DNA of 64,000 nucleotides, taken from assembly GCF_035594765.1 (NCBI RefSeq), contig NC_085844.1:184404107-184468106 (forward strand). Direction: 5' to 3'. Positions 12,241-63,471 of this stretch are shown here, piece after piece (position 1 is the stretch's first letter; the number at the start of each line of letters is the position of its first letter). The position numbers and the translations under genes are program-made. The stretch is from Anolis carolinensis. Taxonomy: Eukaryota. A model generated the notes under the pieces. It was given only the letters and a program-made list of their open reading frames with translations. It was not told where the DNA came from and did no database searches.

Positions 12241-12759
12241 TTCTACAGTGGTTAATTAGCTTGATTTGTGGGAGCAATAAATCTGCTCACCAAAAGTCAG
12301 TTTCCCCAAGAAAATTACTGTTGTTGTATCTGCAGGAGCAAGTAATGTGCCATAAAACAATGGTATATTTACTGCAAAATAAGCCCTCTATGAATGGACT
12401 GGAATTTATTTTCACTCATTGACACTGAATGCACCTACACTGTATAATTAATGTGATTTGACAGGACTTCAACTGCTGTAGCTGAATGCTATGGATTTGT
12501 GGTTTGGTGGGGCACCAGTATCAATTGGCAAAGCAGGTAACTCCCATGATTCCATAGCTTTCGGCCATGGCAGTTAAATGGTGTCAAACGGCATTAATTC
12601 TACTATGCCGATGCACTCTCTGGCTGCTCACTGGAAAGATCCGAAAGACCTTGATCACTCCTGAAAATGTAGGGCCAGGGACATGGCTCACATCTTTTAG
12701 GGTCCAGTTCCATCCCATCCCACTTTCAAAACTGTATGCTTGAGACTTTCATAGCATTG

Positions 12760-13240
12760 TGTTGTTGACTGCTTTCATGGCCGGAATCACTGGGTTGCTG
12801 TGAGTTTTCTAGGCTGTATGGCCATGTTCCAGAAGCATTCTCTCCTGACATTTCGCCCGCATCTATGGCAAGCATCCTTAGAGATTGTGAAGTACAGCAC
12901 TGTATAGTGGAAACTAGGCAAGTGGGGTTTATATATCTGGGAAATGTTCAGGGTGGGAGAAGTACCCCCCAACAAAGGATTCCCGTAGGCAGGGAATAGC
13001 CAGGCTTTAAGCTGCCAGGCTATTCAATGCTAATCAAGCTGGACAATTGCAACATTCACACTTCCAACAGATGAGAGTTCTTTCTCCTACCCTGGACATT
13101 CCACAGATATATAAACTCCACTTGCTTAGATTCCAAAAACTAATAACCTCTGAGGATGCCTGCCATAGGTGTGGGAGAAACGTCAGGAGAGAATGCTTCT
13201 GGAACATGGACATACAATCTAGAAAACTCACAGCAACCCA
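12760..13240. mobile_element. Penelope-like element terminal repeats in inverted arrangement
   Basis: CCAGAAGCATTCTCTCCTGAC... occurs in both orientations. The same unit is linked to GIY-YIG coding sequence at 48500-49390. Confidence 0.75.
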
Positions 13241-13426
13241 GTTTCACAGCATTTTATGCTGCATCCGAAGAAGTGGCCTTATATCCACGAAAACAAATGC
13301 TAAAATAAAAACCAATCAGTCTTAAAAGGGCTCTCGCATCCCTTTATTTCCCTCCCCTGCTCCTTTTTCTGCTGCAAGAGACTAACACGGCTAATTCTTT
13401 GAAACCCAATCCATAAATTCTGTCAC

Positions 13427-13520
13427 CTTCTTCTGCGAAGGAAGAAACCTCCTGAGACGAGCAGGCGTCGCTACAAGGCCACCATCTTCTTTCCCACTAC
13501 ATGCGCCAACTTCCGGTGCG
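13427..13520 (-). promoter_or_regulatory. TOE1: Probable TOE1 promoter and non-coding first exon
   Basis: CpG-rich patch with an ETS motif CCGGAAGT (13509-13516), a YY1-like AAGATGGTGGC and a splice donor AAG|GTGACA at 13427/13426. The ATG-containing exon has an acceptor at 10960-10961, which requires an upstream exon. Confidence 0.55.
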
Positions 13521-13929
13521 CTGCGGGGTCCTTCCCCTCCTGTCAGACCTTGCGCTTAGCTGTCTATGTACATGCCTTACTCACGTTCTCGCCACTTCAG
13601 TTTCATATCAAAGCGGTAAAATTTATAATAAGGATGGCTGTGCTTCCTCACCTTAAAAAGGCCAGTCAGCATTCATTTCTTACACAAGAAAAGTACAGCT
13701 GCCTTTTAAAAAAGGAGGCAGTATGAACTCTTGGGAAAAACACTTTAATGCTCTACTGACTCTACTGGTCGGTTTTTCACCCTGTAGAGATAAGGGTGCC
13801 GAAAACAACCAGGAAGGAGCCAGAATTAAAAACCATTGCTGTGACATGTTTTTGGGACTACATCTCCCAGAATTCCCGTCATTGGACAGCTTTTCTGGGG
13901 CTTCTGGGAGTTGAAGTCCACAAAAGTAT

Positions 13930-14190
13930 ATCTAAAGAGTAAAGACAAAGATCCACCCAGAGGAAAAGTGGATACATCAAAGGAACCACTGACCACATCA
14001 AAGGAACCACTGACCACATAGGGAAGCTGATGAAGAAACACAACCTACAAACTATCTACAGACCCACTAAGAAAATCCAACAAATGCTACGATTCTCTCA
14101 CTTCTGCAGAAGTCTACCGTATACCATGCAGCTGTGGACAAGTCTACATAGGGTCCACCAAATGCAGCATTGCCCAGACACACCAAAAGG
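13930..14190 (+). mobile_element. Penelope-like ORF fragment
   Basis: Translates to MKKHNLQTIYRPTKKIQQMLR, as in the 48800-49160 copy. It includes a 21-bp tandem duplication (ACATCAAAGGAACCACTGACC x2). Confidence 0.7.
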
Positions 14191-14537
14191 GCGCCAAAAA
14201 GAACTAACGAGTCAGAATTCAAAACCGTTGCTGTGACAGGTTTTTGGAATACATCTCCCAGAATTCTCGGTCATTGGACTGCCTTGCCGGGGCTTCTGAG
14301 AGTTGAAGTAATATTGTCTGCGCGATATGCTTGCAGTTGAACCTCATAGCACCTTTGAGGCCAAGGATGCATCTTCAGCAGGCATGGACAAACTTCAGCC
14401 CTCGAGGTGTTTTGGACTTCAGCTCCCACAATTCCTAACCCGTGTAGATGCCCGTGGGACTCTAGACTTTTGCTACCTCTCTGCAACTGCGAGTCTCGCC
14501 CTTCCCCTTTCTGAGCCTTCTCTTGGTAGAAAAGACT

Positions 14538-14715
14538 GAAGCCATGACTCTCTTTGATTGGTTCACAGAAATGCGGAAGCCATGCCTCGTTTTGATTGGT
14601 TCACAGAAATACGGAAGCCAGTGCGTCGTTTTGATTGGCTCTGCGCTGCCTCGCTTTAGAACTCCCAAGTAAGGCGCGCGGGGCAAGGAGGGAGCAATAG
14701 CAACAAAGACACGAG
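14538..14715 (+). promoter_or_regulatory. MUTYH: Probable MUTYH promoter (three tandem ~38-bp CCAAT/ETS units) and non-coding first exon
   Basis: Three ~38-bp repeats each carry ATTGG (14557, 14595, 14634), with CGGAAG at the junctions. CpG-rich sequence follows, then a donor GAG|GTAGGA at 14715/14716. Confidence 0.55.
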
Positions 14716-14844
14716 GTAGGATTATGCTTAATTCGTTTTGAGCTCAGGTCTCCATCCCTAACTATCACATGGGATTAAAAACACCCCTTCTGAATGCATT
14801 TCTTGAGCTCAATATTACAACAGCATCGTAATGCAAAATCTCTA

Positions 14845-15190
14845 TTACAGAAACAGTCAGGGCCAGTTAACAACCCGCAGCAAAGGATTTCCCCAGGAAG
14901 GAAGCAGCCAGGCTTTGAAGCTGCAAGGCTATTAAATGCGAATCGGGATGGGCAACTGCAACATTCACACTTGCTCCAAACAGACAAGAGTTCTATCTCC
15001 CATCCTGAATATGCCACAGATATATAAACCCCACTTGCCTAGTTTCCAGCATACCTCGTAACCTCTGAGGATACCTGCCATAGATATGGGCGAAGCGTCA
15101 GGAGAGAATGCTTCTGGAACATGGCCATACAGCCCGGAAAACTCACAGCAACTGTGATTCCAGCCATGGAAGCCTTCGACAACACATTGA
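14845..15190 (+). mobile_element. Penelope-like 3' terminal region
   Basis: Same terminal unit as the other Penelope copies. Confidence 0.75.
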
Positions 15191-16285
15191 ACATCTCTAT
15201 TACATGTTCATAAGGCAATACTTTTTAATGAGAATATGCATCACTGAGTTCAAGGGGATTGATGTCTGAGTAGATGTATCCTGGCTCATAATTTTCAATG
15301 TACTTATTCAGAACTTATTTTTAAAAAGTCATTTCACTCCATAAGTAATATAACCATTTTATTACAAAAGCAGCACTTTTCCCACCTGGAAACAGACACA
15401 GACCAACAAACTCTCTCTTAACAATTGCACCCTAAACTGAAGACATTTGGTTGCTTCGACAGTCTCATAACAACATGCAAGTGGGAAAAGAAGATTAAGC
15501 AGCACATCTACACTGTAGAATGAATATAGTTTGACACTTTAAATTGCCATGGCTCAATGCTATGGGATCCTGGGATATGTTGTTTGGTGAGGCAGCAGCA
15601 GTCTTCAGCAGAGAAAGCTACAGCCCTTGTAAAACTACAACCCCCACTATTCCACAGCACTGAGCCATCGCACTTAGATTACATTAATTCAGCAGTGTAG
15701 ATGTACCCTTGATGTCCATGTCCCTTGTCAAATGATGTAATATTTTTGTTACCACAGGGTTCTGGTTTTTCTGTTGCACATATAAACCCTAAAAGAATGA
15801 TTAAGATTGGGTTATACATGTTGAGATTCTCCTGTCTGAAATGCTTAGACCAAAAGTGTTTTCGATTGCGGGATTATTTATTTTTTACTTTGAGATAGCT
15901 GTACATAAATGAGATATCTTGAAATTAAAACCAAAGTCCATATGTGGAGTTTATACACCTTAAACACATAGCCTGAAGGTAATTCTATACATACTTTAAA
16001 TATTTTTATGCATGGAACAAAGTTCATTGAACCATCAGAAAGCAAAGGTGTCACTGCCTCAGCCACCCATGTGGGTGATTTCACATTTGGAATTCTGGAT
16101 AAGGGATGCTCAACCTGTATTTCACTTTTAATTTTGTAAAGATTAAAGATGATTTTTTAAAGATCTATGTTCCTGTTATGATGGAATGCAGGGCATTATA
16201 TACAAAGTGGTATCCAAAACTCTAAAATTGTGTTTGAAGAATCTAATCTGAGAGTAACATGGTCTCTGCCGTTCTTAGCTTGGCA

Positions 16286-22200: not shown

Positions 22201-25200
22201 GGAGTCCCTTTAGCTCAGTGTTGGGGGCCCCAAAAATTGCAATAATAAATCTAGTGGCTGTTTTAGACATTTACATGAATCTGTCAACAACAGTGTGAGC
22301 TGTTTACAGTGGATTCTGCAGAAAATGCATCAGCTGTTCTCCAGAGGAAAACCCGTCTGATTAGCAAGCCTTGTGAATGCTGATTTATTCTCTTTAAATT
22401 TTTATTTTATATCTAATTTATATACCTACTATATACTTGGAGTCACATAAAAATTTCTCAGGTTAAAAGGGGTCCCAAGCAGAAAAGTTTAAAAAGCTCT
22501 GGTATACAAAATGCAAATTTGTTCAAAATATAGCTCCTTTTGGAAACCCCATGCTATGAAATCTACAGCTCCTCGCTAAAATTAGGGATTCCATGCCATT
22601 TTTCACTGCAATACACTCCTGCCAATTATTGTCACAGCCAGTATCTCCAGGCTTATTGATGAAGAAAAGATTACTGCTCTCCCCAAGACCCTTATTTCAC
22701 ACACAACTCATTTCACCACCCCATGATTGTAGGTATTTCTTCACAGGCCTTTGCCGTGTACATAACTGTTCAGTTTGCTAATGTAGCTGTCTCCTGTTTT
22801 TAGGGCTTTAGCCAACAGTCTGGTGGATCCAACTCATCCAGGTGACTTTAATCAAGCAATGATGGAATTGGGGGCAACTGTGTGTACCCCCAAGACACCC
22901 TTATGCACAGAGTGTCCAGTGAAGCAGCACTGTAGGGCTTATCACAGAGTGAGTAGGATCCTTTCTCTTCTCTGTGTTCTAGTCCAACCTGTGTTGTCCT
23001 GCTGTGGAATCAGATTAATATTTGCTGGAAAGGGGACATAGAATCTGTGAAGGGCTTACTGCAGTCAACATTCACTCCATTTATGTGTGAATTTATTATT
23101 TATCTGTGTGTCTGTCTGTGTGTCTGTCTGTCAGGGAAAGACGGGATACTGCAGACTTCCATGCAGTGCATGCTTCATGAGAAGTTCTCACTGTGTTCCA
23201 TATTTCTTATTTAGTATTGCAGTATTTGCTGTCTTTCAAGATTTCAGTCTTCCAAAGGTGGCTTCAGAGGGTTATCCTTGCTATTAAATGTGTCTAAGAT
23301 TGCAGTCCTGTTCATTTACATAGAACTAACTCTTCATTGCATGTAATTGGATTAGTATCTGTGTATAGGATTGCAGTGCTAGTCTAACAAAGTAATCTAA
23401 ATGTGAGTTGGTATTTTATAATATCCTAAACCACAAATCTTTTCCAATTCCTTCCACATAACAATGTCTAATTCATCATAATTCTTTAAATGCTGTGTAT
23501 ATTAAACAGCATCTTTCCATACTGACTTGGGATTTTCAGTACTGGAATCATAGCTTTGTTAGCACTAAACTTGATTTTTTTTCGTGTCAGGAGCGACTTG
23601 AGAAACTGCAGGTTGCTTCTGGTGTGAGAGAATTGGCCGTCTGCTAGGACGTTGCCCAGGGAATTCCTGGATATTTTTTTGGTGGTTTTTTAATGTTTTT
23701 ACCATCCTTGTGGGAGGCTTCACTCATGTCCCTGCATGAAACTGAAGCTGATAGAGGGAGCTCATCCGCACTCTCCTCGGGTTGGATTTGAACCTGGCAG
23801 CCTTCAGGTCAGCAACCCAACCTTCAAGTCACAAGGCTTTAATCCACTACGCCACCGGAGGCTCCTACAAAACTTGATCATGAACCAAGAGACACTGAAA
23901 TTCTAGAGGAGAAAATCTGTGGAGGAGAAGTGTGACTCTCATTCACACTTCTGCTATTCATAAGTGACTGAAATCTTCCTCTTTTGCAGGTGGAGAAGGA
24001 TCTGGTACTTTCTGGAGAGAGACTGCTAGGAAAAGCAGCCTCGAAGTACTCCCACTTGCCAGATGTGGAAGAATGTGGTGAGTGTTAATACACCTTGTAT
24101 TGCCAGGTTATTTATTGGCACAGGGAACTGATATTTATTGACGTTTATAACAGCAGGAAAACTCTAGGTTATTCATTCTCAAGAAATCGCTCTTTCCTTT
24201 CTCTCTCTACCATTCAAGAAAGATGCTTCAAGAAGGAGGAATGGGCTACTGTCAGCAAAGTCAGACTGTCCTTAAAAAGGCATATTTGTGTTCAGATGTC
24301 CCTGGTTTCCAGACCACTGTGTTTTAATTTCTGTGAAAGATGGACTGAGATCCAGGACTGCTGGAACCATAGTGGGCATTTCTCCTTGGTTTGGTGACCA
24401 AGTCAGCCTGGGCAGATAACAGCAGCTGGAGCTTAATAAATAGAATATTTTTTCCTCCTGCATTTCCTTGAGTTCTGTGGCACTATTAGGTTCCCCTCAA
24501 GTGAAAGAAAACTTTAGTGTGTTCAGGTGACCAACTTGAAAATGTTCTTTCAATTCTGAAAAAAAGTGCTTTTAGAAAACAATCTGTTCTCCGCCATGTG
24601 AATAAATTATTTTATGGATTTTATTGTTATATTTGTAACTGCATGTGCATAAGATGAAACAGAAATATATACTCCTAAATGCAGAGGTTCATATCCCTAG
24701 TAGCAGTCAACTGAGGGAATAAATAAATGCTAGCCAACATTATTATTTTCCCTGCCATTAAGTATCTGTTCTCCAGGTTTTGCAGTCCAGCTGCCATTTC
24801 CTTCTGATAAGTTGTCTAAATTTTGTAGGTTTTTCCGTTATACGACTGTTGAGTGGATGCATATTGAAGTAGAAAGTCATACAATCTGTTACATCTGCCT
24901 GATACATAGCCAGTATTAGAACACTAGTTCACTATCATGGGATGGACAGCATCATCTGGTTTACTAAGTGAATTTGAATCAAATTCTTTTCTTCTCATTT
25001 GCAGCCACCACTACAGGGAGTTGCTCTTTCTGCCTGCCTACTTCAGAGCCGTGGGATCCCAGTCTTGGGGTGGCCAATTTCCCCAGAAAGGTCACTAAGA
25101 AGAAGCCAAGAATCGAACATACAGCCACGTGTGTGCTCCAGCGGAGAAGCATTGGTGGGGAACCAGAGTATCTTATTGTACAGAGACCCAGCTCAGGTAA

Positions 25201-27161
25201 ATGCTTCACAAATAGGTATTTCTGAAAAAAGGGAACTATTTTCAGGTGGCAAACTATTATTCCTTCCCCAGCCAAACATCCTCTTTCTTCACCAACTAAA
25301 GAAGTGTGTGTGCAAATGTGTGATAAGCCCACAGTATATCTTTGTGTATTAAAAAAGAGAAAAACAACGCACATTGCTTTTGTGTGAGCATTTAGTGGGA
25401 AGGAGAGGTTTTCCCTGGAATGACACATGTGATTTTAAGTTGAAGTGTGTAAGAGACTTAGTAAGAGGCTGCAGAAAGTGAGTGCCTGCACTGCTGAAGT
25501 TTGCTCGAGTTTAGTTGCCTGTTAAAAGACTATGATGCAGTTGAAATAAAAGAAGAAAACAAAATGAATTGTTGATGCACCTCTTCCCTCAACAATAGTA
25601 AAGATATACACAATTTTGCCTGGGGAATATCAGTTCAGTTACTAAGGAAAATAATGTATCCTCAATAATGGCCTTCCTATCTTGTGATAATTTGTATAAT
25701 ACTAGCTTGGGTACCCTGCCCGGGCTATTTGAAAAAGTCTTTTTTTATTTTACAAAATGTATAAGGCTGAGGGTCAACTACAACTCACATCATGACCCCT
25801 GAAACTCCATCAGTAGTAAAAATGTGTTATGTTTGGCAAGTTGCTCTAGATGCATGATTGGTAGGATTCAGTGTACTCTCTGGCTGTAGGATGAACTACA
25901 ACTCCCACCATGGTGAGTCAGTCCCCCTCAATTCCCTCCAGTAGGTTCAGTTGGTCATGGGGGTTCTGTGTGCCAAGTTTGGTCCAGATCCATTATTGGT
26001 GATGGTCACAGTATCTCTTGCTGTCGGTGAACTACAACTCCCAGAAATGAAGGTCAGTTTCCCCCAAACCCCTCCAGTATATTCAGTTGATCATAGTGAT
26101 TCTGTGTGCCTAGTTTGAGCCAGGTCCATCGTCAGTGGGGTTCACAGTTTCTCTGGTTGTAGGTGAACTACAACTCCCAGAAATTGAGGTCTATCCTTCC
26201 CAAACCCCTCAAACATTCAAATTTGGGTGAATCAGGCATGCGTGCAATGTTGCTTGAATTCACAATGCTATTTGTATGTAGGTGAACTACAACTCCCCCA
26301 AATTAAGGTGAATTCCCCCCAAAGCCCTCTGGTATTTTTTGTTGGTCATGGGGGTTCTGTGTGCCAAGTTTGGTCCAGGTCCATCTTTGGTGAAGTTCAG
26401 AGTGCTCTTTGATTGCAGGTGAACTTTAAATCCCAGTACCTACAACTCCCAAGTGTCAAGGGCAATTCCCCCCAAAACCCACCAGTATTCAAATTTGGGC
26501 ATATCGGGTATATGTGCCAAGTTTGGTCCAGATCCATTGTTCTTTGGGTTCACAGTGCTCTCTGGATGTGAGCTACAACTCCTATAAATCAAGGTCAATT
26601 GCTCCAAAACCTCTCAAGTATTTTTCGTTGGTCACGGGGCTTCTGTGTGCCAAATTTGGCCCAGGATCATTGCTGGTGGGGGGTCACAGTGCTCTGTCTT
26701 GGTGCAGGGTGAACTACAACTTTCATCATGTTGAGTCAGTCCCTCAAACCCTTCCAGTATGTTCAGTTGCTGATCAATTCTGCTCTGTTTGCTGTGCACC
26801 ATAGAAAAGAGTAGGAAAGGGTTATGGGAGAGGCAGTGGACTGGGTCATGCAAATTCCACACCAATGGAGAGACTAAGAAACACTGGAGTGTCTGTGGTG
26901 GAGGAAACACGTAAAATCTAGGATGAAATTATGCCTGTATGAAAGCCTTCACTTGGGTGGCGGGCAGTATGGTGTTTGTGGAAGACACTGGCAGGGGTTG
27001 TACATATTCACGGCACTCACTATAACCTGCAATGTCATTGGAGAGAGGGCCATTGGTGTCTCCTGCATAGTGGGAGCTATAGCTATTTGTGGAAGTGGGA
27101 GCCTGTCTGTGTAAGTGGACATCCCAGGCACATACACACATACATATTTTCACTTTTATTA

Positions 27162-27230
<69 letters not shown>

Positions 27231-30200
27231 GTAATGGCATCAGGGCGATGCACAAAACAACAAAAGTAAAGGCCCTCCAACCTTGAAATTTGGCCACATA
27301 ACCCATCATCCACGGCTCCAGTAAGATACAGCACAATTAGATGGCAAACACAATCACAGGGCCAACAAAAGCCCAAAAACCGCAACAGGCGGTCTGCGCC
27401 TGCGCGCACACCGCCCTCTCCTCCCTTCCCGCGCGCACACACACACATCATCCTCACCCAGGAGGCCTCACAAACACCTCGCCATAGCTGGACCTGGGCT
27501 GAAGGAAGGCAGGAAGGTGGATTCCTCTGCCCTCTCCCCCTCAATCTCCTCCCCCCTCAGGACCCATGGAGGGTCGCCGAGCAGCCCCCTCCTCCCGCCC
27601 CTCTCCCCTCCCCTCAGCGCCAGGAAGGCCCCGCGGACCCCCGCCTCACCCTCTCTCCTCCTCCTGGCCTCGGCCTTCCTCCTACCGGGCCCTCCGCAGT
27701 GCCGTCTGCACCCTGGCCCGCCTCAAGGACTTCTTCCCCGGTTCTTCTCTGAGGACTTCAAGGTGAGGGGGGAAGAGGAGGGTATGGCCCTCGAGCAAGC
27801 CTGGACCTCCCCTCCAGTTGTTTTGGGTGCCAAGCCCCGCCCTTCCCGGCCTCAGGCCCCTTCCTTTCCCCCCTCGTTAAACGGCTGACGGGGGGGAAAG
27901 TAAACAGCCTCAGACCAGGAAGGGTGGAAGTTGGCGCCCAAAACAACTGGAGGGAAGGCCCAAGTTGGCCCAGGCTGAGCCCCCCCCTTTTCTGTTGTTA
28001 TTGTGGTTGTTGTTGTTCTCACCCACAAATGACAACCCCTCCAATGCCTCAGCAGCACCCCTTTTTTCCCTCTCAAGCCCTATCGCCCTCACCTTTCCCT
28101 TCCCTGTCAGTAATCATTATTATTAATATAATAATAACTGGTCATCATTTAAGAATGTAATAGTAACCAATAATAATAGTAATTTATTATTGTTATTATA
28201 ACAGTAATAATCATTCAACAATACAATAATAACTAATCATAACAAGTTATTATTATTACAACTATAATAAACATTCAAGGCTGTCATAATAATAATTATT
28301 ATAACACTGATAATCATCCAACAATGTATTAACAATTCAAAATAAGAGTAAATTATTATTATTATTATTATTACAGTAATAATCATTCACAAATGGAATA
28401 ATTATTAGAACATTGATACAAGGGAATTCCAGACAGGAAACAATCAGGGCCAGCTAACACCTCCCAACAAAAAATTCACTCAGCCAGAAAACAGCCAGGC
28501 TTTAAAGCTGCAAGCCCATTACATGCTAATCATTTTCCCTAATTCCAACATTCATACTTCCCTCCAACAGACAAAAAACAATCAGAAATATTGTATATTC
28601 ACAACCTTGAGAAAATAATCTCTCCTGATGGCGCAGCGTGTTAAACCGCTGAGCTGCTGAACTTCTGCACCCAAAGGTCGCAGATGAACACAGCCCCCAC
28701 TATTAGCCCCACCTTCTCCCAACCCAGAAGTTCGAAAACATACAAATGAGAGTAGATGAATAGGTGCCTCTGCGGCGGGAAGGTAACGACGCTCCATGCA
28801 GTCATGCTGACCACATGACTTTGGAGGAGTCTACGGACAACGCCGGCTCTTCAGCTTAGAAATGGAGATGAGCACCAACCCCCAGAGTCAGACACGACTG
28901 GACTTAATGTCAGGGGAAAACCTTTACCCTTTACCTTAACTACCACCACTTCCTCAATACTTTATTTCCCATACCACCAGACTTCGCCACAGCAACGCGT
29001 GGCCGGGCACAGCTAGTAACTTTATATAATGCAGTTCCTGAGGGCATTATCTCAGAAACCTTTGTAACAGCCAGCTCATCCTGTTTTTTAAGTGATCTTA
29101 AGAGTGTCCAGTTCTTCCCATTAAAATCAAGTCTATGCCTTTAGCTAATTTTACAACTAGGTTTTCTAGCTCAGGTTCTTTGTCAGTATCTTGTTTAGGA
29201 ATTGTTGTTGTTCCAGGCATCTCCCAGAATGCTTTTGTTACTGGACACTAACAAGCATTACTGCCATAGCATGTGCTTGATGCAGCAGATGATGCACAGT
29301 TGTTTCTGTGAAATATTATATTGTAATGTATACAGTGAGGCTTCTGTAGCCATGGAATTGGTTCCAGGATCCCCAGAAGATACCATAAAAACATATCCAT
29401 CACTCAAGTCCTTTACATAAAGGGACAAGAAAGGAGCTGAAATAAATTCCAAAGGGAGTTGCCTGTGTGCTCATAAGCTTCAGCCTCCCTGAAAATCAGT
29501 TTCCCTTTGGGGCTTCTTTGAGTTTTCTGGGCTGTATGGCCATGTTCCAGAAGCATTCTCTCCTGACGTTTCACCCACATCTATGGCAGGCATCCTCAGA
29601 GGTTGTGAGGATGCCTGCCATAGATGTGGGTGAAATGTTAGGAGAGAATGCTTCTGGTACATGGCCATACAACCTGGAAAACTCACCGCAACCGGCCATG
29701 AAAGTCTTCAACAACACAGTTCACCTTTTTTTCTCTCTCCTTCATTACATGATCTTTTCGGTTTACCACCTGTCTACACCCCAAAGTCAGATGCCATATG
29801 CAAGAAATTCAGTCTCCCTTTTCATCCTCAACAGCTTTTTCATCCTTAGCAGGGAACTGTTGCAGAAGAGTTTTTACCATAGTCTTTATGCAAGGCCACC
29901 AGGTGGGACAAGGGAGAGATGAGATGTCCTGCAATATCTTTAAAGCCCTGATTCCTTAGAATTATTTTCAATTTGCCACTTGTTAAATCTGCAGTTCCAA
30001 GGCCTGTGGATAGAGAGGGACCACTATAATCAACATTGTATTAAAATATATTAACGTTTTAACATTTTGTATGTGGCTTTGTATCACCAAGAGGACAAAT
30101 TCTCACATCCACTATGCCACATGAATTTGCACTAATGACTATGTGCTTCCTTGTAGGACTGCTGGCAGGGCTGTGGGAGTTTCCAAGCCTCCTCCTTGAG

Positions 30201-45849: not shown

Positions 45850-46620
45850 TTCAGGCATTGGAGCAAATGTAGGACACGGCGTATTATTGGAGAACACAGA
45901 AATGCTGGACCACTCAAACGGCCACCATGTCAGACTCCACAGAGAGGCTACTGAAATCCGCAAGCATGTGGACAATTAAACCATGAAAATGAACAAAATC
46001 TGGCTACTAGTATTTAAAAAACCCTCTAAATTCAGGACAGTAAATAAAGAACAACACTCTGAAAACAGGGGAGTTCCAGACAAGAAAGAATCAGGGTCAA
46101 AAAACACATCCTAACAAAGGATTCCCCCAGACAGGGAACAGCCAGGCTTGGAAACTGCAAGGCTATTGGGTTGTTAGTTTTCCGGGCTGTATGGCCATGT
46201 TGCAGAAGCATTCTCTCCTGACATTTCGCTCACATCAGTGGCAGGCATCCTCAGAGGTTGTGAGGTATAATGGAAAACCTAAGCAAAGGAAGTTTATATA
46301 TCTGTGGAAGGTCCAGGGTAGGAGAAAGAACTCTTGTCTGCTGGAGGCCAGTGTGAATGTGTAATTAATCACCTTGATTAGCGTTAATGGCCTTATCAGC
46401 TTCAGGTCCTGGCTTCTTCTTACCTGGGGGAATCCTTTGTTTGGAAGTGTTTCTGGTCCTGGTTGATTCATTTCTGGAATTCCACTGTTTTGAGAGTGCT
46501 TTTCCTTATTTGTTGTTGTTTATTTGTTCAGTCCACCACTTAACCACTTAACACCACTTAACATAGGATTCCCCCAGGCAAGAAGCAGCCAGGCTTTGAA
46601 ACTGCAAGGCTATTCAAGGC
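45850..46620. mobile_element. Penelope-like fragments (both orientations)
   Basis: GIY-YIG C-terminal coding remnant (ILLENTEMLDHSNGHHVRLHREATEIRKH) plus the terminal unit. Confidence 0.75.
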
Positions 46621-57763: not shown

Positions 57764-60700
57764 TTTTAAACAAGTGGAAGTATGTGATCAGTAGGAGGGT
57801 GGCTAAGTCATCAAAGAAGGCTAATTTTGACCTGGAACCTAATGCTTTGGACATTAATGGAGCTTGAAGACTCTGACATTTGTTTTGTTGTATGGAAAGA
57901 ACAGCTGGGAAGTTTGGGATAATGGAGATGGGATGGGATATAAATATACTAAACTTGCACATTTCAGGGAGGTTTAGGAAGAAGCTGGAGTAAGCGATTA
58001 TGTGTTGAGTTGATCAACAAAGAAAACCAATCTGTGCCAATTATACCAGAGAATTAAAATGATTAAATGCAGTAAATCTGTATCCTAGGGGAAATTATGG
58101 AAATAAAATTTCTGAAGTGTATGTATTCTGTTCTTACAATATCTTTGTGTATAAGAGGCTTTACAAATTTATGACATAACCACTAGGTTTCTGTTGGGGC
58201 TTTATGTCTTTGTAAGTGGACTTATGTCCATGGGATTAACCAAGAATGCTTCTTAGTCTCAGGCCAAGAATGTAACAAAGGATAGGCGATAGCTCCCAGC
58301 TACAAGCATCTTGTTTGCCCAGTCCAGCCATTCTTCTCCAGGGCCTGGATTTCATAATTCCAGGACTCTTGCTAGTCTGGAATGCCAGCACTCTTTTCAA
58401 ATTCTTCTCTGCCCACAGAGCTTTCCTTGCCTAGCTGGGAAGAGATTTCCAACCACATCATCGGAGCTCAGCCAATCCGAACAGAAGAGAGAAGATTCAA
58501 ACTCAAACAATTAAACAAACCCTATTTAGCCTCATGCAGGAGCACATGTAGTCAGACTTATTCTTTGAGGCAGGAGCCCACAAGTCTCCATCTCTGATCA
58601 GAATGAACAATAAAACACCTCTACCCTTGTCTTCAGCTGCTTTGGTGAATTTTAATCTGGGTTTATTATTAATTAGGGTTGGGTATTAATTGTTAGCATT
58701 TCTTGCCAGGAAGAATCCTCAAAGTATTGCAGTCTAGATTCTATAACAATAATACTGATCCAAAACATTACTGCTGTGTATTATCGCAAATAACATTTAC
58801 TCTCCCAATTTTTATATTCGTTTAGTTTTCCCTCTTATTTTCCTGCATGTCTATTTGAAAACTAGAAAATCAATTTTGAATAAATATGAAAAGGCTCAAT
58901 ATCATAAACAGCTGGGAAATATAAAATTGTTGTTGTTATCATTATTATGTTTATTTGTACCCCGCTTTTTATCTCCACAAGGATACTCAACACAGCTTAC
59001 ATTAAAACTATTGCCATACAATATAAAATCTATAAATATACAAACATTAAAACAGTATTAAACATCAATGATATTGAAAAATCCAGTTAAAATCCAAGAA
59101 AAACATATTCAAAGCAAAAAGCCATAGCACCCCCTGACTTGATCTTTAAAACCTCTTTAAAGGCCTGCCTGAATAAAAAGGCAAAAGGACATTTAGGCTG
59201 CAATCCTATGTTTACCTCAGATTATACCCATATGAAGAAGTGGGACTTACTTTTGAGTAAATGTGCATAGGATTGCACTGTAAGAGCCTAAAATAATGTG
59301 TTTGTTCTTTCAGTGCTTTTGATCTAAATTTACCTGTTTTAGTATTATTATCATTATCATTTTGTTTTGGTTTTGAGAATAATTAATCTCCATATACTAC
59401 TGATTTTTAAAAGACAAGAGAAAACTAATTGTTGCTAAGAAGAGCAAAATGAAGAGCTTGAATGGCTTTGGACTGTCATCTATTTTCCCTGGTCCCTTTT
59501 GATCAAGACTACTCTACCCATGACCCCATGACCTGGACTACTTATGGTCTGTTTATGAGTCCACAAGTTCACATCTCAAGTGGAGCAAAATCCTGGTTTC
59601 TTATCATGTTCACTATCATACCAGCTTAACATATTTCTCAAATATTTGCTAAAAGGCATTCTTCCTGGGGCCTCTCAGTTTCTCTGCAGCCTGAATCTAC
59701 TCAGAAGTACAATCCACAGGAATATGCCTATTTTATTACATGTATGCCCAAGCTTTTATTTAAGTTGCTCAGGGCATACATAATTTCCCACGTTCACAGA
59801 ATCTCTGCAAAATAAATTAGGCCAAGGTGAAGTGACTGAGCCAGGGTCAGTCACTACAATCACAAATGGTGATTTTGCCAGCTCAAGTCCAATAGACAAG
59901 TAATACTTTAAAAGTCATCCCATTCCCTATGAGGCATTACTTGGGGGAGATTGGATTAGTGGGAAATTAATAATGACCCTTTGGAAAATAACATAGGGAT
60001 GGGTCACTATTTTGATCAGTGTCATATAAATTTTCCTATTTGATTTCCTTGGCTTTCTTTTTTTGAAGCAAAAATACTTTTTAAGGCACTTTGCTCAATT
60101 AACCCATTTAATGACTGCTTCATATTCCTATCCAAGACTACACAGTATTAGTAGGTTACTCTGATTGAAAAAGGAAAATCAATAAGTGACATCAACAAGC
60201 ATAGTGCTTGCCAAATTATTACTCAATTCTCTGTCCAGCTGCCTTTTCCCAACATTTTTTAAGTGAAGAGGCATGGATGAGAAAACAGAGTTCATACATT
60301 CTCTGTTAATTTACACTTTAAAATACAATGAGAACATATAACAAGATGAACATTAAAATAGGATCTCACTATTGATAGTATTAAAATAAACTACACGTGA
60401 AACGATAAAACATGAAGGATTTTTACAACCTGTAACTGGAGACATTTTGGCTTCAAATAATGGGGGCAAAGTTTGGTTTCAAAATTCTAGAATTTATTGT
60501 CAAAGGCTTTCACGGCCAGAATCACTGGGGTATTGTGTGGTTTCCAGGCTGTACGGCTATGTTCCAGCAGCATTTTCTTCTGACATTATGCCTGCATCTG
60601 TGGCTGGCATCTTTGGAGGATCTATTCTAGAATTGCCTTTATGTTTGCTTTGCACTGGACAGAAGAACACTGAATGTGATTTTGAGTGTGGACTAATATG

Positions 60701-62384
60701 ACTATGTAAACACTTGTCCATCCACATTTGTGGGTTTAATCTTTATAAAATTTATTCTTTACAGATTACTTGCTGTGTCCTTCACTTCTGCCCTACACCA
60801 TTTTTAATAGTGACTTTTACCCACCTTGAGCCTAGAGACCTATAATGGTTTTCCACTTTCACAAGAGTTCTGAGCTCTAACCCACATAAAAGTAGATCGA
60901 GTTTTTTCAGTCAGGCAATTAGATGGTTGGGGATGTTCAAGGTTGTAGATTTTTGTCATTGCTGTTCTAGAAGTATTGGATTCATGGAGATTTCAGATCT
61001 TTGCACCCATTTCTTTGTTCTAAAAATGGTTTTTGGAACTTCTAAACCTTAATTTTGCTCTTTGTCTTCTCCCTTCTCTCTCAAACACACATGCACAAAT
61101 GTGTATGACAGTTTTTGTCTCACTTAACTAGTATCAAAGTTGTGTAGATTTTTGGATGTTTTATTTTCCGTATAGCTCTGCCTTTTGCTGTGGAGGTCCT
61201 TGAACCTTGAATATCTGGGAGGGACATCTGTGGAAATAACATCTGTGGAAGTAGTACAATATTGTGTGCATGTAATTATTGGCCTGTGCATGTATGTTTT
61301 CCCATACAAGATACATTGAGGCTAGCCAGCACCTTCCAGGAAATACAAGTTTTGTCTGGATACTTCCCTATTTTCTGGTTGAATTTAAAAAATACTTGAT
61401 TATAGTCATCCGTATGCTGAGAGCTGAGCACATTGAAACCTATTCTGGTTTCTCCTTCTGATGATAAATTTAGTAATTCTTTCCCAAGCATTATTTAAAG
61501 AATGTTTCAATTGACATTCTCTGAATCTTAGAATACTGGTACCCATACAAAGAAATCTCAAACTGCGGGCAGTTGATTGGATTTGAGAAAAAGCAGAGGA
61601 AAAGTTGGATTCAGTTACTGCCTTCTTCTGAATCTTTTCTTGTTGGTGAAATTGTACCAAGAACTCTATTGTCTTTGTTGGATGCATTTTTCCAGCTTTG
61701 TGGCACATGAATGACTCAACGTATTGTGGCTGTGGAAGACCTTCTGGCTACACCTGCAGAGGTTGTTGTAATAAGGCAATAAAATCTGATGACAAAATTA
61801 AACTTTGTATGTTTATTCAGTAATTTATATACTGCGATGGCCTGAGTTTTTTGAGATACAAGGTGGGCTATTTCTTGCAGAAATAAGTTATATCTCGCCA
61901 AAGGTACAACTTTTAAAAGTCTGTAGTGCTAGAGTGTCAATGCCCTGATGTGTTTTGTAGTTTACAGCCTATTTTTGAAGATATACAAAATTTAGAAAAA
62001 TTAGGATGGTGTAATTGCTCCTATTGTCATGTACACAATGCATTCAATTCAACTTACTGGTACAGTGTGTAATACAATATACAGCTATCATGGTCCTAAG
62101 AGCATGTTTTATTTACAAGGCACCACCATTCACAACATGACAGAAGAAACTTGTTCGCAGAGCCTCCCACAAAAAGCACAAGTTATCAGAGGGAAAATAT
62201 TAGGATTACGTTCTGAATCCTTTTGGGAAGAGCCCAAAGCTCAGTGTGTCCTTTCATATTCACAAATAAATCTAGTTTTCCATCTTTAGTCTATTTGAGT
62301 GGCATCTTGGAACGCTAAATGTAGTCTTTCCTTTCACATCAGTAAGCACAATTGATGCCACACATGGTATTTGGAAATGTTTTA

Positions 62385-62805
62385 AGTGTGTTGTCGAAGG
62401 CTTTCATGGCCGGAATCAACTGGATTGCTGTATGACCATTTTCCAGAAGCATTCTCTCGCGACGTTTAGCCCACATTTATGGCAGGCATCCTCTGAGGCT
62501 GTGAGGTCTGGGGGAATCCTGGCTGGGGGAAACAAAGGATTCCCCTAGGCAGGAATCAGCAAGGCTTTGAAGCTGCAAGGTTATTCAATGCTAATCAAGT
62601 CGGCCAATTGCAACATTCACACTTGCCTCAGGGAGACAAGAGTTCTTTCTCCCACCCTGGACATTCCAGAGATATATAAACCCCACTTGCCTAGTTTCCA
62701 ACAGACCTCACAACCTCTGAGGATGCCTGCCATAGATGTGGGCGAAACATCAGGAGAGAATGCTTCTGGAACATGGTCATACAGCCAGGAAAACTCACAG
62801 CAAGC
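62385..62805. mobile_element. Penelope-like inverted terminal repeats
   Basis: Same architecture as 12760-13240. Confidence 0.75.
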
Positions 62806-63471
62806 CAATGTTTTTTGTTTTCCTAAGCAAGAGCAACCTTCTTACAGTTCTCTGCAACTCGACAAGAGTTGGATATTACAAAAAACAAAGCCATCTAGGA
62901 TACAGGGAACATTTCTTGGGCAGCTAAGGTAGCTCCTATGTCATGACAACCCAAACTAAAAACTTATATTCTAAGTTTAGTTAAATGTTTGCCCTGAAGG
63001 AATATTGAGAATGTACATGGAGCTATTTTTATTTAAGAATTTATGCCTGCCTCTCAATGCTCAGGTGGCTTTACACGGACAAAGGATATTTATTTATTAC
63101 ATGCATTTATACCCCGCCCTTCTCCCCGAGGGGACTCAGAGCAGCTTACATTCTGCCACGAGGGCCAGCAACAAGTATACTATAAAACAAAACAATTTAA
63201 ACCTGATAAGTATACAAACATTAAAACGCTGCAAGGCAGCGATATTGCACCATCCTCAGTGACATTTTAATATGACAATGATAGTGATATGACATTTTAA
63301 TGAAAATGACTGGATTCCAACAGCACCCTCCTTGTGACAATACCAGTTTAAGATAGCATACTGACACCTCGTGGTAGCAACAACATAGCATTGTAAATGA
63401 GACACAGTGGGGCCCTGGTCTCCATTAGCATTTGGTTCCCCTCCCACATCTCCAATCTCCATAGATGATTT

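What the first reader, a model, noticed from the sequence alone, without database searches (positions are those of the whole stretch)
27380..28100. Helitron-like element carrying a captured TESK1 first exon (with CpG-rich flanks and splice donor) inside a MUTYH intron
Seen: a GC-rich island in an AT-rich intron. It encodes [10 protein letters not shown]...[22 protein letters not shown] and, after a short frameshifting deletion, FFSEDFK followed by a GTGAGG donor (27763). It sits inside an element ending in a hairpin plus CTAG|T with no TSD. Recalled knowledge: TESK1 begins with a Pro/Gly-rich stretch and then [34 protein letters not shown]|V. TESK2, the usual neighbour of TOE1, has RALISAF, so the source looks like the unlinked TESK1 locus. 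Inference: the donor and intron-like sequence are retained, so the capture was DNA-level (rolling-circle) rather than retroposition. Helitron gene capture is well known in plants and bats; I cannot tell whether it has been reported for this lineage. The element could spread a CpG promoter plus donor module, here sense to MUTYH and upstream of its last four coding exons.
Basis: partly seen in the sequence, partly recalled or inferred. Interest (0 to 1): 0.8.

Follow-up and report, generated by a model that had tools for sequence, protein, structure and literature searches.

The report
Lizard transposon carrying kinase-like exon copy
A 1.8-kb many-copy mobile element, most likely a rolling-circle Helitron, sits in an intron of a lizard MUTYH gene and carries a decayed DNA copy of a gene start whose exon looks like that of the kinase TESK1; this kind of event is well known from bats and maize, and I found no sign that the copy is used.

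Summary
The sequence features are all there. A GC-rich block (27380-27980) lies in a 4.96-kb MUTYH intron, on the MUTYH strand. It holds the ORF MEGRR...[12 protein letters not shown]..., then FFSEDFK in a shifted frame, then an AAG|GTGAGG donor at 27763.

Contigs from four public DNA runs show the block is not single-copy. Other copies about 93% alike run unbroken across the exon end and donor. Repeated DNA stops at 29016, right after ...CTAG|T.

There are no terminal inverted repeats. From about 27120 to 29016 the + strand has the strongest shortage of G relative to C in the window. I read it as a non-autonomous Helitron with captured cargo.

Three things stay unproven.
- The 5' end is hidden in a (TG)n(TA)28 microsatellite.
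- The 3' hairpin folds no better than shuffled sequence.
- No tool could confirm the TESK1 match. Every protein search was blank, as expected for a match of about 22 residues, so it rests on recalled sequence.

No RNA run was available, so promoter or splicing activity is untested.

The scan already found the same cargo on other DNA of this genome (s1-517346, s1-517391, s1-558062). Verdict: a new example of a known kind, of modest interest.

The parts
25197..30156 (+). MUTYH intron that holds the element
   Evidence: The flanking exons match adenine DNA glycosylase residues 272-337 and 335-382. GT at 25197 and AG at 30155-30156 were read.
27153..27226 (.). (TG)n(TA)28 microsatellite at the probable 5' boundary
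   Evidence: TRF finds 28 perfect TA units at 27170-27225. Cumulative G-C peaks at 27118. Read laying masked 27153-27235.
27227..27395 (+). 5' segment of the element, shared with many more copies than the cargo
   Evidence: Summed contig depth is 1.5e5-5.6e5 at 27222-27308, with 56-98 contigs per variant site. There is no other copy in the window.
27380..27565 (+). GC-rich stretch upstream of the ATG, possibly promoter or 5'UTR, ending in an acceptor-like CCTCAG
   Evidence: GC 0.66, CpG o/e 0.57. A pyrimidine tract plus CAG lies at 27558-27560.
27566..27762 (+). Exon-like ORF with a TESK-type N-terminus, frameshifted near 27736
   Evidence: Other copies at 93% identity span 27641-27848 and 27648-27818.
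27763..27768 (+). Splice-donor-like GTGAGG
   Evidence: AAG|GTGAGG read.
27795..27969 (.). Imperfect palindrome: 79-nt arms, 78% complementary, 17-nt loop
   Evidence: Contig depth is about 10 times that of the exon part.
27970..28109 (+). Pyrimidine-rich stretch ending in an acceptor-like TGTCAG
   Evidence: Read.
28110..28417 (+). AT-rich spacer (GC 0.18) with internal repeats
28418..28580 (+). Fragment of an abundant interspersed repeat, G-depleted
   Evidence: Other copies lie at 14850-14987, 46065-46167, 46334-46483(-), 12964-13065 and 62531-62629. It has lost 13 of 31 consensus G.
28618..28937 (+). Sauria-type SINE copy inside the element
   Evidence: Five other copies lie in the window at 73-80% identity. 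Contigs in all four runs join 28618 to 28937 without it.
28938..29016 (+). 3' terminal segment: hairpin 28986-29003, spacer, CTAG 29013-29016, then host T at 29017
   Evidence: Depth falls to a single contig's level (7, 12, 12.5 and 82 in X1, X2, X10 and X14) in the first wholly unique bin, 29049-29135. Unique contigs start at 29000, 29001 and 29017.

Best explanation
The stretch from about 27150-27240 to 29016 (+) is one decayed copy of a non-autonomous Helitron-type (rolling-circle) transposon of a lizard genome. Its ends belong to very abundant families. Its middle (about 27396-28350) is a rarer cargo, present in roughly tens of copies. That cargo was copied as genomic DNA from the start of a host gene: CpG-rich upstream DNA, a first coding exon with a TESK-kinase-like N-terminus (most likely TESK1), its splice donor and some downstream non-coding DNA. 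The element also carries a fragment of another interspersed repeat and a Sauria SINE. In this copy the exon is frameshifted and CpG-decayed, and I take it to be an inert passenger in the MUTYH intron. Shown: multi-copy status, the 3' boundary, absence of TIRs, continuity across the donor, and a strand-biased composition that spans the whole unit. Inferred: the Helitron mechanism, the TESK1 source, and inertness.
For: (contigs of four DNA runs, at least 80% alike): everything left of 29016 is covered by many contigs, while 29049-29300 carries one contig at single-copy depth. Unique contigs reach 29000 and 29001 (X1, X2) or start at 29017 (X14). Variant sites in 27562-27834 are covered by 3-65 distinct contigs, nearly all with the family letter, and several of them (for example 27665) are CpG in the family and TpG or CpA here. 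Pieces 27641-27848 and 27648-27818 are ungapped at 93% identity. The joint 28618->28937 appears in all four runs; the terminus is CTAG|T with a hairpin 9 nt upstream; no TIRs; the 1.8-kb window starting at 27201 has the lowest GC skew of the whole 64 kb (-0.256); cumulative G-C peaks at 27118 and levels off at about 29000. Literature: anoles hold thousands of roughly 2-kb non-autonomous Helitrons, and one family, Helitron-2N3_AC, contains Poseidon and SINE fragments (PMC3014272). [quoted passage not shown]
Against: No 5' TC end was found. The boundary lies in a microsatellite that the read tool masked. The hairpin folds no better than shuffles. No Helitron consensus or Rep/Hel partner was available for comparison. 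All protein searches for the ORF were blank, so the TESK1 assignment rests on recalled sequence: a run of 12 identical residues, then LAR, DF and GFFSE.K, as I remember human TESK1. Summed contig depth is not a copy number, by the tool's own warning.
Confidence: 0.68

Rival explanations
1. The cargo is real and multi-copy, but the carrier is not a Helitron. It could be another transposon type, or a composite block 25702-29016 moved or duplicated by another route.
For: The 5' end is unresolved. A second ...AAGCTAG|T-type end lies on the minus strand at 25702-25725. The outer flanks of the block share TTTGTATAATA and TTTATATAATG. Anole hAT elements also pick up foreign DNA (PMC3014272).
Against: The two ends do not align with each other: score 14 against a shuffle mean of 15.5. 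No inverted repeats link the ends. The skew domain starts at about 27120, not at 25702. The CTAG|T end is typical of Helitrons.
Confidence: 0.15
2. The source gene is TESK2, or another TESK-like gene, rather than TESK1.
For: Letters between joints in two family contigs read ...TTCTTCTCGGAGGTCTTCAAG, that is FFSEVFK. As I recall, that is the human TESK2 form; human TESK1 has FFSEVYK. TESK2 is the usual neighbour of TOE1 and MUTYH (recalled).
Against: RALRSAV and LAR fit TESK1 as I recall it; TESK2 has RALISAF and LTR. The family letter C at 27665 turns the W codon into R, giving RPRPSSY, which is nearer to the TESK1 GRGRPSSY (plus memory). All of this comes from memory, not from a tool.
Confidence: 0.15
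3. The kinase likeness is chance: the block is a GC-rich repeat of some other origin.
For: No tool gave any significant protein match. The ORF is Pro/Ser-rich and of low complexity.
Against: A match of about 22 residues cannot reach E 0.001 in a library of 1.84 billion proteins, so the blank tells little. The recalled run of 12 identical residues, plus the glycine-loop motif placed directly at a good donor, is hard to get by chance. Earlier notes of this scan reached the same reading on other copies; these are unchecked and not independent.
Confidence: 0.1
4. The block works here as an alternative promoter and first exon, or as a cassette exon, of MUTYH.
For: It is in sense orientation. CpG o/e is about 0.6. 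It has a good donor and an acceptor-like CCTCAG at 27560, which would make a 202-nt cassette.
Against: It is a decayed copy of a many-copy repeat. The ATG frame leaves the exon in phase 2, whereas the next MUTYH exon needs phase 1. A 202-nt cassette would shift the frame. No RNA run holds the stretch.
Confidence: 0.05

Closest known systems
[quoted passage not shown]
   Same: A non-autonomous element amplifies a genomic copy of a gene's 5' end, including the splice donor. The captured part has a lower copy number than the shared termini.
   Different: The host is a lizard and the cargo is TESK-like. There are tens rather than over 1,000 copies, by a rough reading of contigs. The Helitron termini are only half shown here.
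Helitron-2N3_AC of Anolis carolinensis (PMC3014272)
   Same: An abundant non-autonomous Helitron of about 2 kb, reported to contain Poseidon and SINE fragments. The element here also holds an interspersed-repeat fragment plus a Sauria SINE in front of its 3' end.
   Different: That paper reports no host-gene capture and calls composite Helitrons rare in anoles.
Maize and bat Helitron gene-fragment captures in general (PMC4224331)
   Same: Capture at DNA level, a bias towards gene 5' ends, and decayed pseudo-exons that can be exonised.
   Different: No transcript evidence here.

Membership tests
Helitron (non-autonomous) | 3' end CTRR followed by a host T | tested here: met
   CTAG at 29013-29016 and T at 29017. 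The boundary between repeated and unique DNA falls there.
Helitron (non-autonomous) | GC-rich hairpin about 10 nt before the 3' end | tested here: inconclusive
   A 5+2-bp stem lies at 28986-29003, 9 nt before CTAG, but its energy is -5.5 kcal/mol with z -0.5 against shuffles.
Helitron (non-autonomous) | 5' end TC after a host A | tested here: inconclusive
   The boundary falls in (TG)n(TA)28 at 27153-27226. The nearest A|TC is at 27239|27240. The read tool masked 27153-27235.
Helitron (non-autonomous) | No terminal inverted repeats and no target-site duplication | tested here: met
   No inverted repeat links the ends. No duplication flanks 27150-27240 and 29016.
Helitron (non-autonomous) | Termini shared with a family that has a Rep/Hel-coding partner | not testable with these tools
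   No eukaryotic genome or Repbase consensus was at hand. The papers' supplements are not held.
TESK1 exon 1 | Significant protein similarity to TESK1 | tested here: inconclusive
   Pfam, PDB, two word searches, the big HMMER search and the Atlas were all blank. The searches are limited by query length or by library size. The match is recalled only.
TESK1 exon 1 | Closer to TESK1 than to TESK2, with flanks collinear with the parent locus | not testable with these tools
   No TESK sequence could be fetched.
CpG-island promoter | GC above 0.55 and CpG o/e at or above 0.6 over 200 bp or more | tested here: inconclusive
   Over 27380-27762 GC is 0.66-0.71 and o/e is 0.57-0.62, which is borderline. 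At several variant sites the family letter restores a CpG (for example C at 27665).
CpG-island promoter | Transcription starts there | not testable with these tools
   No RNA run holds the stretch.

The most novel reading that the evidence does not exclude
The whole element, cargo included, has lost G on its top strand, mostly to A and C. This could be a mutational footprint of the single-stranded top-strand intermediate of rolling-circle transposition. Such a footprint could orient and delimit Helitrons, and it would blur captured exons such as this one. An earlier follow-up of this scan (s1-517356) saw the same on other DNA. Here it recurs in two cargo pieces that have outside references.
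Probability: 0.3. Interest if true: 0.65.

Novelty: new member of a known kind. Interest (0 to 1): 0.3.

Why it matters
Helitron capture of gene 5' ends is textbook for bats and maize. The anole transposon survey I read (PMC3014272) reports only transposon fragments as Helitron cargo, and I found no paper that links Helitrons with TESK1. A dispersed module of CpG-rich DNA, exon and donor could seed chimeric or poison exons in host genes such as MUTYH. Nothing here shows that it does so.

Tried and rejected
- **Protein identity of the ORF.** Pfam, PDB, word searches with the 66-aa and 87-aa pieces, the 1.84-billion-protein HMMER search and the ESM Atlas were all blank. The word search only sees proteins of 36-152 aa. 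A match of about 45 bits would have E near 0.4 in the big library. So these blanks do not argue against TESK.
- **Papers.** A search for the peptides PSSYRAL, FFSEVYK, FFSEVFK and SYRALRSA gave 0 papers. Helitron plus TESK1 also gave 0.
- **RNA families.** Rfam found nothing at gathering score in the window. An E-value scan of 12700-15300 found no hammerhead, so I could not show that the abundant repeat is Penelope-like.
- **TIR or TSD model for 25702-29016.** Rejected.
- **Viral contigs.** The 18-mer of the 3' end has six exact matches in IMG/VR, but those contigs share nothing else with the window. About two matches are expected by chance, so I take them as chance.
- I did not type remembered TESK sequences into any tool.

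Full report
**Setting.** The window is from a squamate. It holds six copies of a Sauria-type SINE and sub-threshold matches to mir-5408, which I recall as an anole microRNA family. A CAF1-family gene of TOE1 type lies on the minus strand (Pfam CAF1, E 7e-26). MUTYH lies on the plus strand from about 18.1 to 33.2 kb. Its exons give HHH, HhH-GPD, EndIII_4Fe-2S and NUDIX_4 matches. The stretch 24968-25222 matches adenine DNA glycosylase residues 272-337 and 30063-30305 matches residues 335-382. The finding lies in the intron between these two exons, about 25197-30156. It is on the MUTYH strand, with three or four coding exons downstream.

**Observation.**
- The ORF 27566-27766 reads MEGRR...[31 protein letters not shown].
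- A second frame reads PRFFSEDFK and is followed at once by GTGAGG at 27763.
- GC is 0.66-0.71 and CpG o/e 0.57-0.62 over 27380-27762, against o/e 0.11-0.13 around it.
- Upstream of the ATG there is an acceptor-like pyrimidine tract plus CAG, ending at 27560.
- The 3' end reads hairpin (28986-29003), nine bases, CTAG (29013-29016), then T.
- The hairpin is weak: -5.5 kcal/mol, z -0.5.

**Is it repeated?** Yes. I laid the contigs of four DNA runs from four studies on 26700-29300 at 80% likeness or more.
- To the right, 29049-29300 carries a single contig at depths of 7, 12, 12.5 and 82 in X1, X2, X10 and X14. Unique contigs reach in to 29000 and 29001, or start at 29017.
- Everything to the left is covered by many contigs.
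- In the exon-like part, variant sites are covered by 3 to 65 distinct contigs. Nearly all of them carry the family letter where this copy has T or A. At several of these sites (for example 27665) the family letter restores a CpG, so part of this is CpG decay private to this copy.
- Ungapped pieces at 93% identity span 27641-27848 and 27648-27818. They cross the exon end, the donor and the downstream sequence, so the unit was copied as DNA, not from mRNA.
- The middle (27396-28352) is far less covered than the two ends (27222-27395 and 28353-29016). This is the pattern expected for a subfamily-specific cargo between widely shared termini. The tool warns that depth is not a copy number, so "tens of copies" is a rough reading.

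**Anatomy.** The claimed element is a mosaic:
1. (TG)n(TA)28, 27153-27226
2. a 5' segment, 27227-27395
3. the GC-rich cargo
4. a 79-nt-arm palindrome, 27795-27969
5. a pyrimidine-rich stretch ending in an acceptor-like CAG at about 28109
6. an AT-rich spacer
7. a fragment of an abundant interspersed repeat, 28418-28580
8. a Sauria SINE, 28618-28937
9. the 79-bp 3' tail

Contigs in all four runs join 28618 directly to 28937, so relatives without the SINE exist. No inverted repeats link the ends.

**Carrier.** The following fit a non-autonomous Helitron:
- the CTAG|T end lies at a sharp repeat boundary;
- there are no TIRs and no TSD;
- the cargo lies between widely shared ends;
- the anole literature describes thousands of roughly 2-kb non-autonomous Helitrons, one family of which contains Poseidon and SINE fragments (PMC3014272).

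A further argument is compositional. The 1.8 kb starting at 27201 has the lowest GC skew of the whole window (-0.256). Cumulative G-C peaks at 27118 and flattens at about 29000. This treats 27120-29016 as one unit with one strand history, and it places the 5' end at the microsatellite. The 5' TC itself I could not find. No Helitron consensus was available.

**Cargo identity.** No tool could confirm TESK. Pfam, PDB, two word searches, the exhaustive HMMER search and the Atlas were blank. This is expected for a match of about 22 residues. The word search only sees proteins of similar length, and a score near 45 bits gives E around 0.4 in 1.84 billion proteins.

From memory, human TESK1 reads ...[38 protein letters not shown]. 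That gives a run of 12 identical residues, then LAR and DF, then the glycine-loop motif ending at the donor. The family letter C at 27665 turns this copy's W into R (RPRPSSY), which is nearer to TESK1. Two family contigs carry letters that read FFSEVFK, which I recall as the human TESK2 form. The lizard orthologues may differ from the human ones. My estimates are TESK family 0.85 and TESK1 specifically about 0.65-0.7. Both are inference, not test.

**Function.** No RNA run holds the stretch. The ATG frame leaves the exon in phase 2, whereas the next MUTYH exon needs phase 1. A 27561-27762 cassette would be 202 nt long and would shift the frame. I take the copy to be inert. At most it is a potential poison exon.

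[quoted passage not shown] Bat Helitrons in general are biased towards capturing gene 5' ends (PMC2997563, PMC4224331). I found no paper on Helitron capture of TESK1 or of host genes in anoles. The scan itself had already noted the same cargo at other loci of this genome (s1-517346, s1-517391, s1-558062). I used these as leads and did not check them. The finding is therefore a new member of a known kind.

**Seen in passing.** Cargo pieces that have outside references have lost G on the element's top strand.
- The repeat fragment lost 13 of 31 consensus G (six to A, six to C, one to T) and gained none. Five other copies in the window lost 2-7 of about 30.
- The SINE lost 20 of 85 G, seven of them to C. 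The other copies lost 5-16, with 0-3 to C.
- Pooled, the loss is 33/116 against 78/576 (Fisher p 1.6e-4). G>C is 13/116 against 10/576 (p 1e-5).
- The palindrome arms differ by eight C/T against two T/C mismatches, in the same direction.

Noticed in passing
window 27120-29016: G is depleted on the + strand across the whole element (GC skew -0.256, the lowest in the window). Cargo with outside references lost 33 of 116 consensus G, against 78 of 576 in other copies (p 1.6e-4). G>C is enriched (p 1e-5). This may be a footprint of the single-stranded transposition intermediate.
   Followed up: partly
window 25702-27152: On the minus strand, GCCCGGGCAGGGTACCCAAGCTAG|T ends at 25702. Beside it lies a tandem array of 136-bp units (about 25826-26770) and repeated DNA up to 27152. 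This may be a second Helitron in the opposite orientation, with its 5' end meeting the first at the (TG)n(TA)28 run. The outer flanks share TTTGTATAATA and TTTATATAATG.
   Followed up: partly
window 27795-27969: A palindrome with 79-nt arms (78% complementary) lies just after the donor. It is covered about ten times more deeply by contigs than the exon part, so it may be a separate foldback repeat inside the cargo.
   Followed up: partly
window 13846-13929 and 14237-14320: Sub-threshold Rfam matches to the mir-5408 precursor (49 and 37 bits; gathering score 90) on a repeated unit. Probably repeat-derived hairpins.
   Followed up: no
window 12750-13320, 15040-15210, 29446-29920, 46170-46270, 60390-60700, 62380-62930: A very abundant interspersed repeat recurs at these places. 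In one frame it reads ...[23 protein letters not shown].... Its upstream part is the fragment carried in the element at 28418-28580. Rfam found no hammerhead in it.
   Followed up: partly
run X14, contig 24 (window 29017-29300): This contig starts exactly at the first host base after CTAG and has 24 unmatched letters before it. It may be an empty site in that individual or population. The letters were not shown.
   Followed up: no
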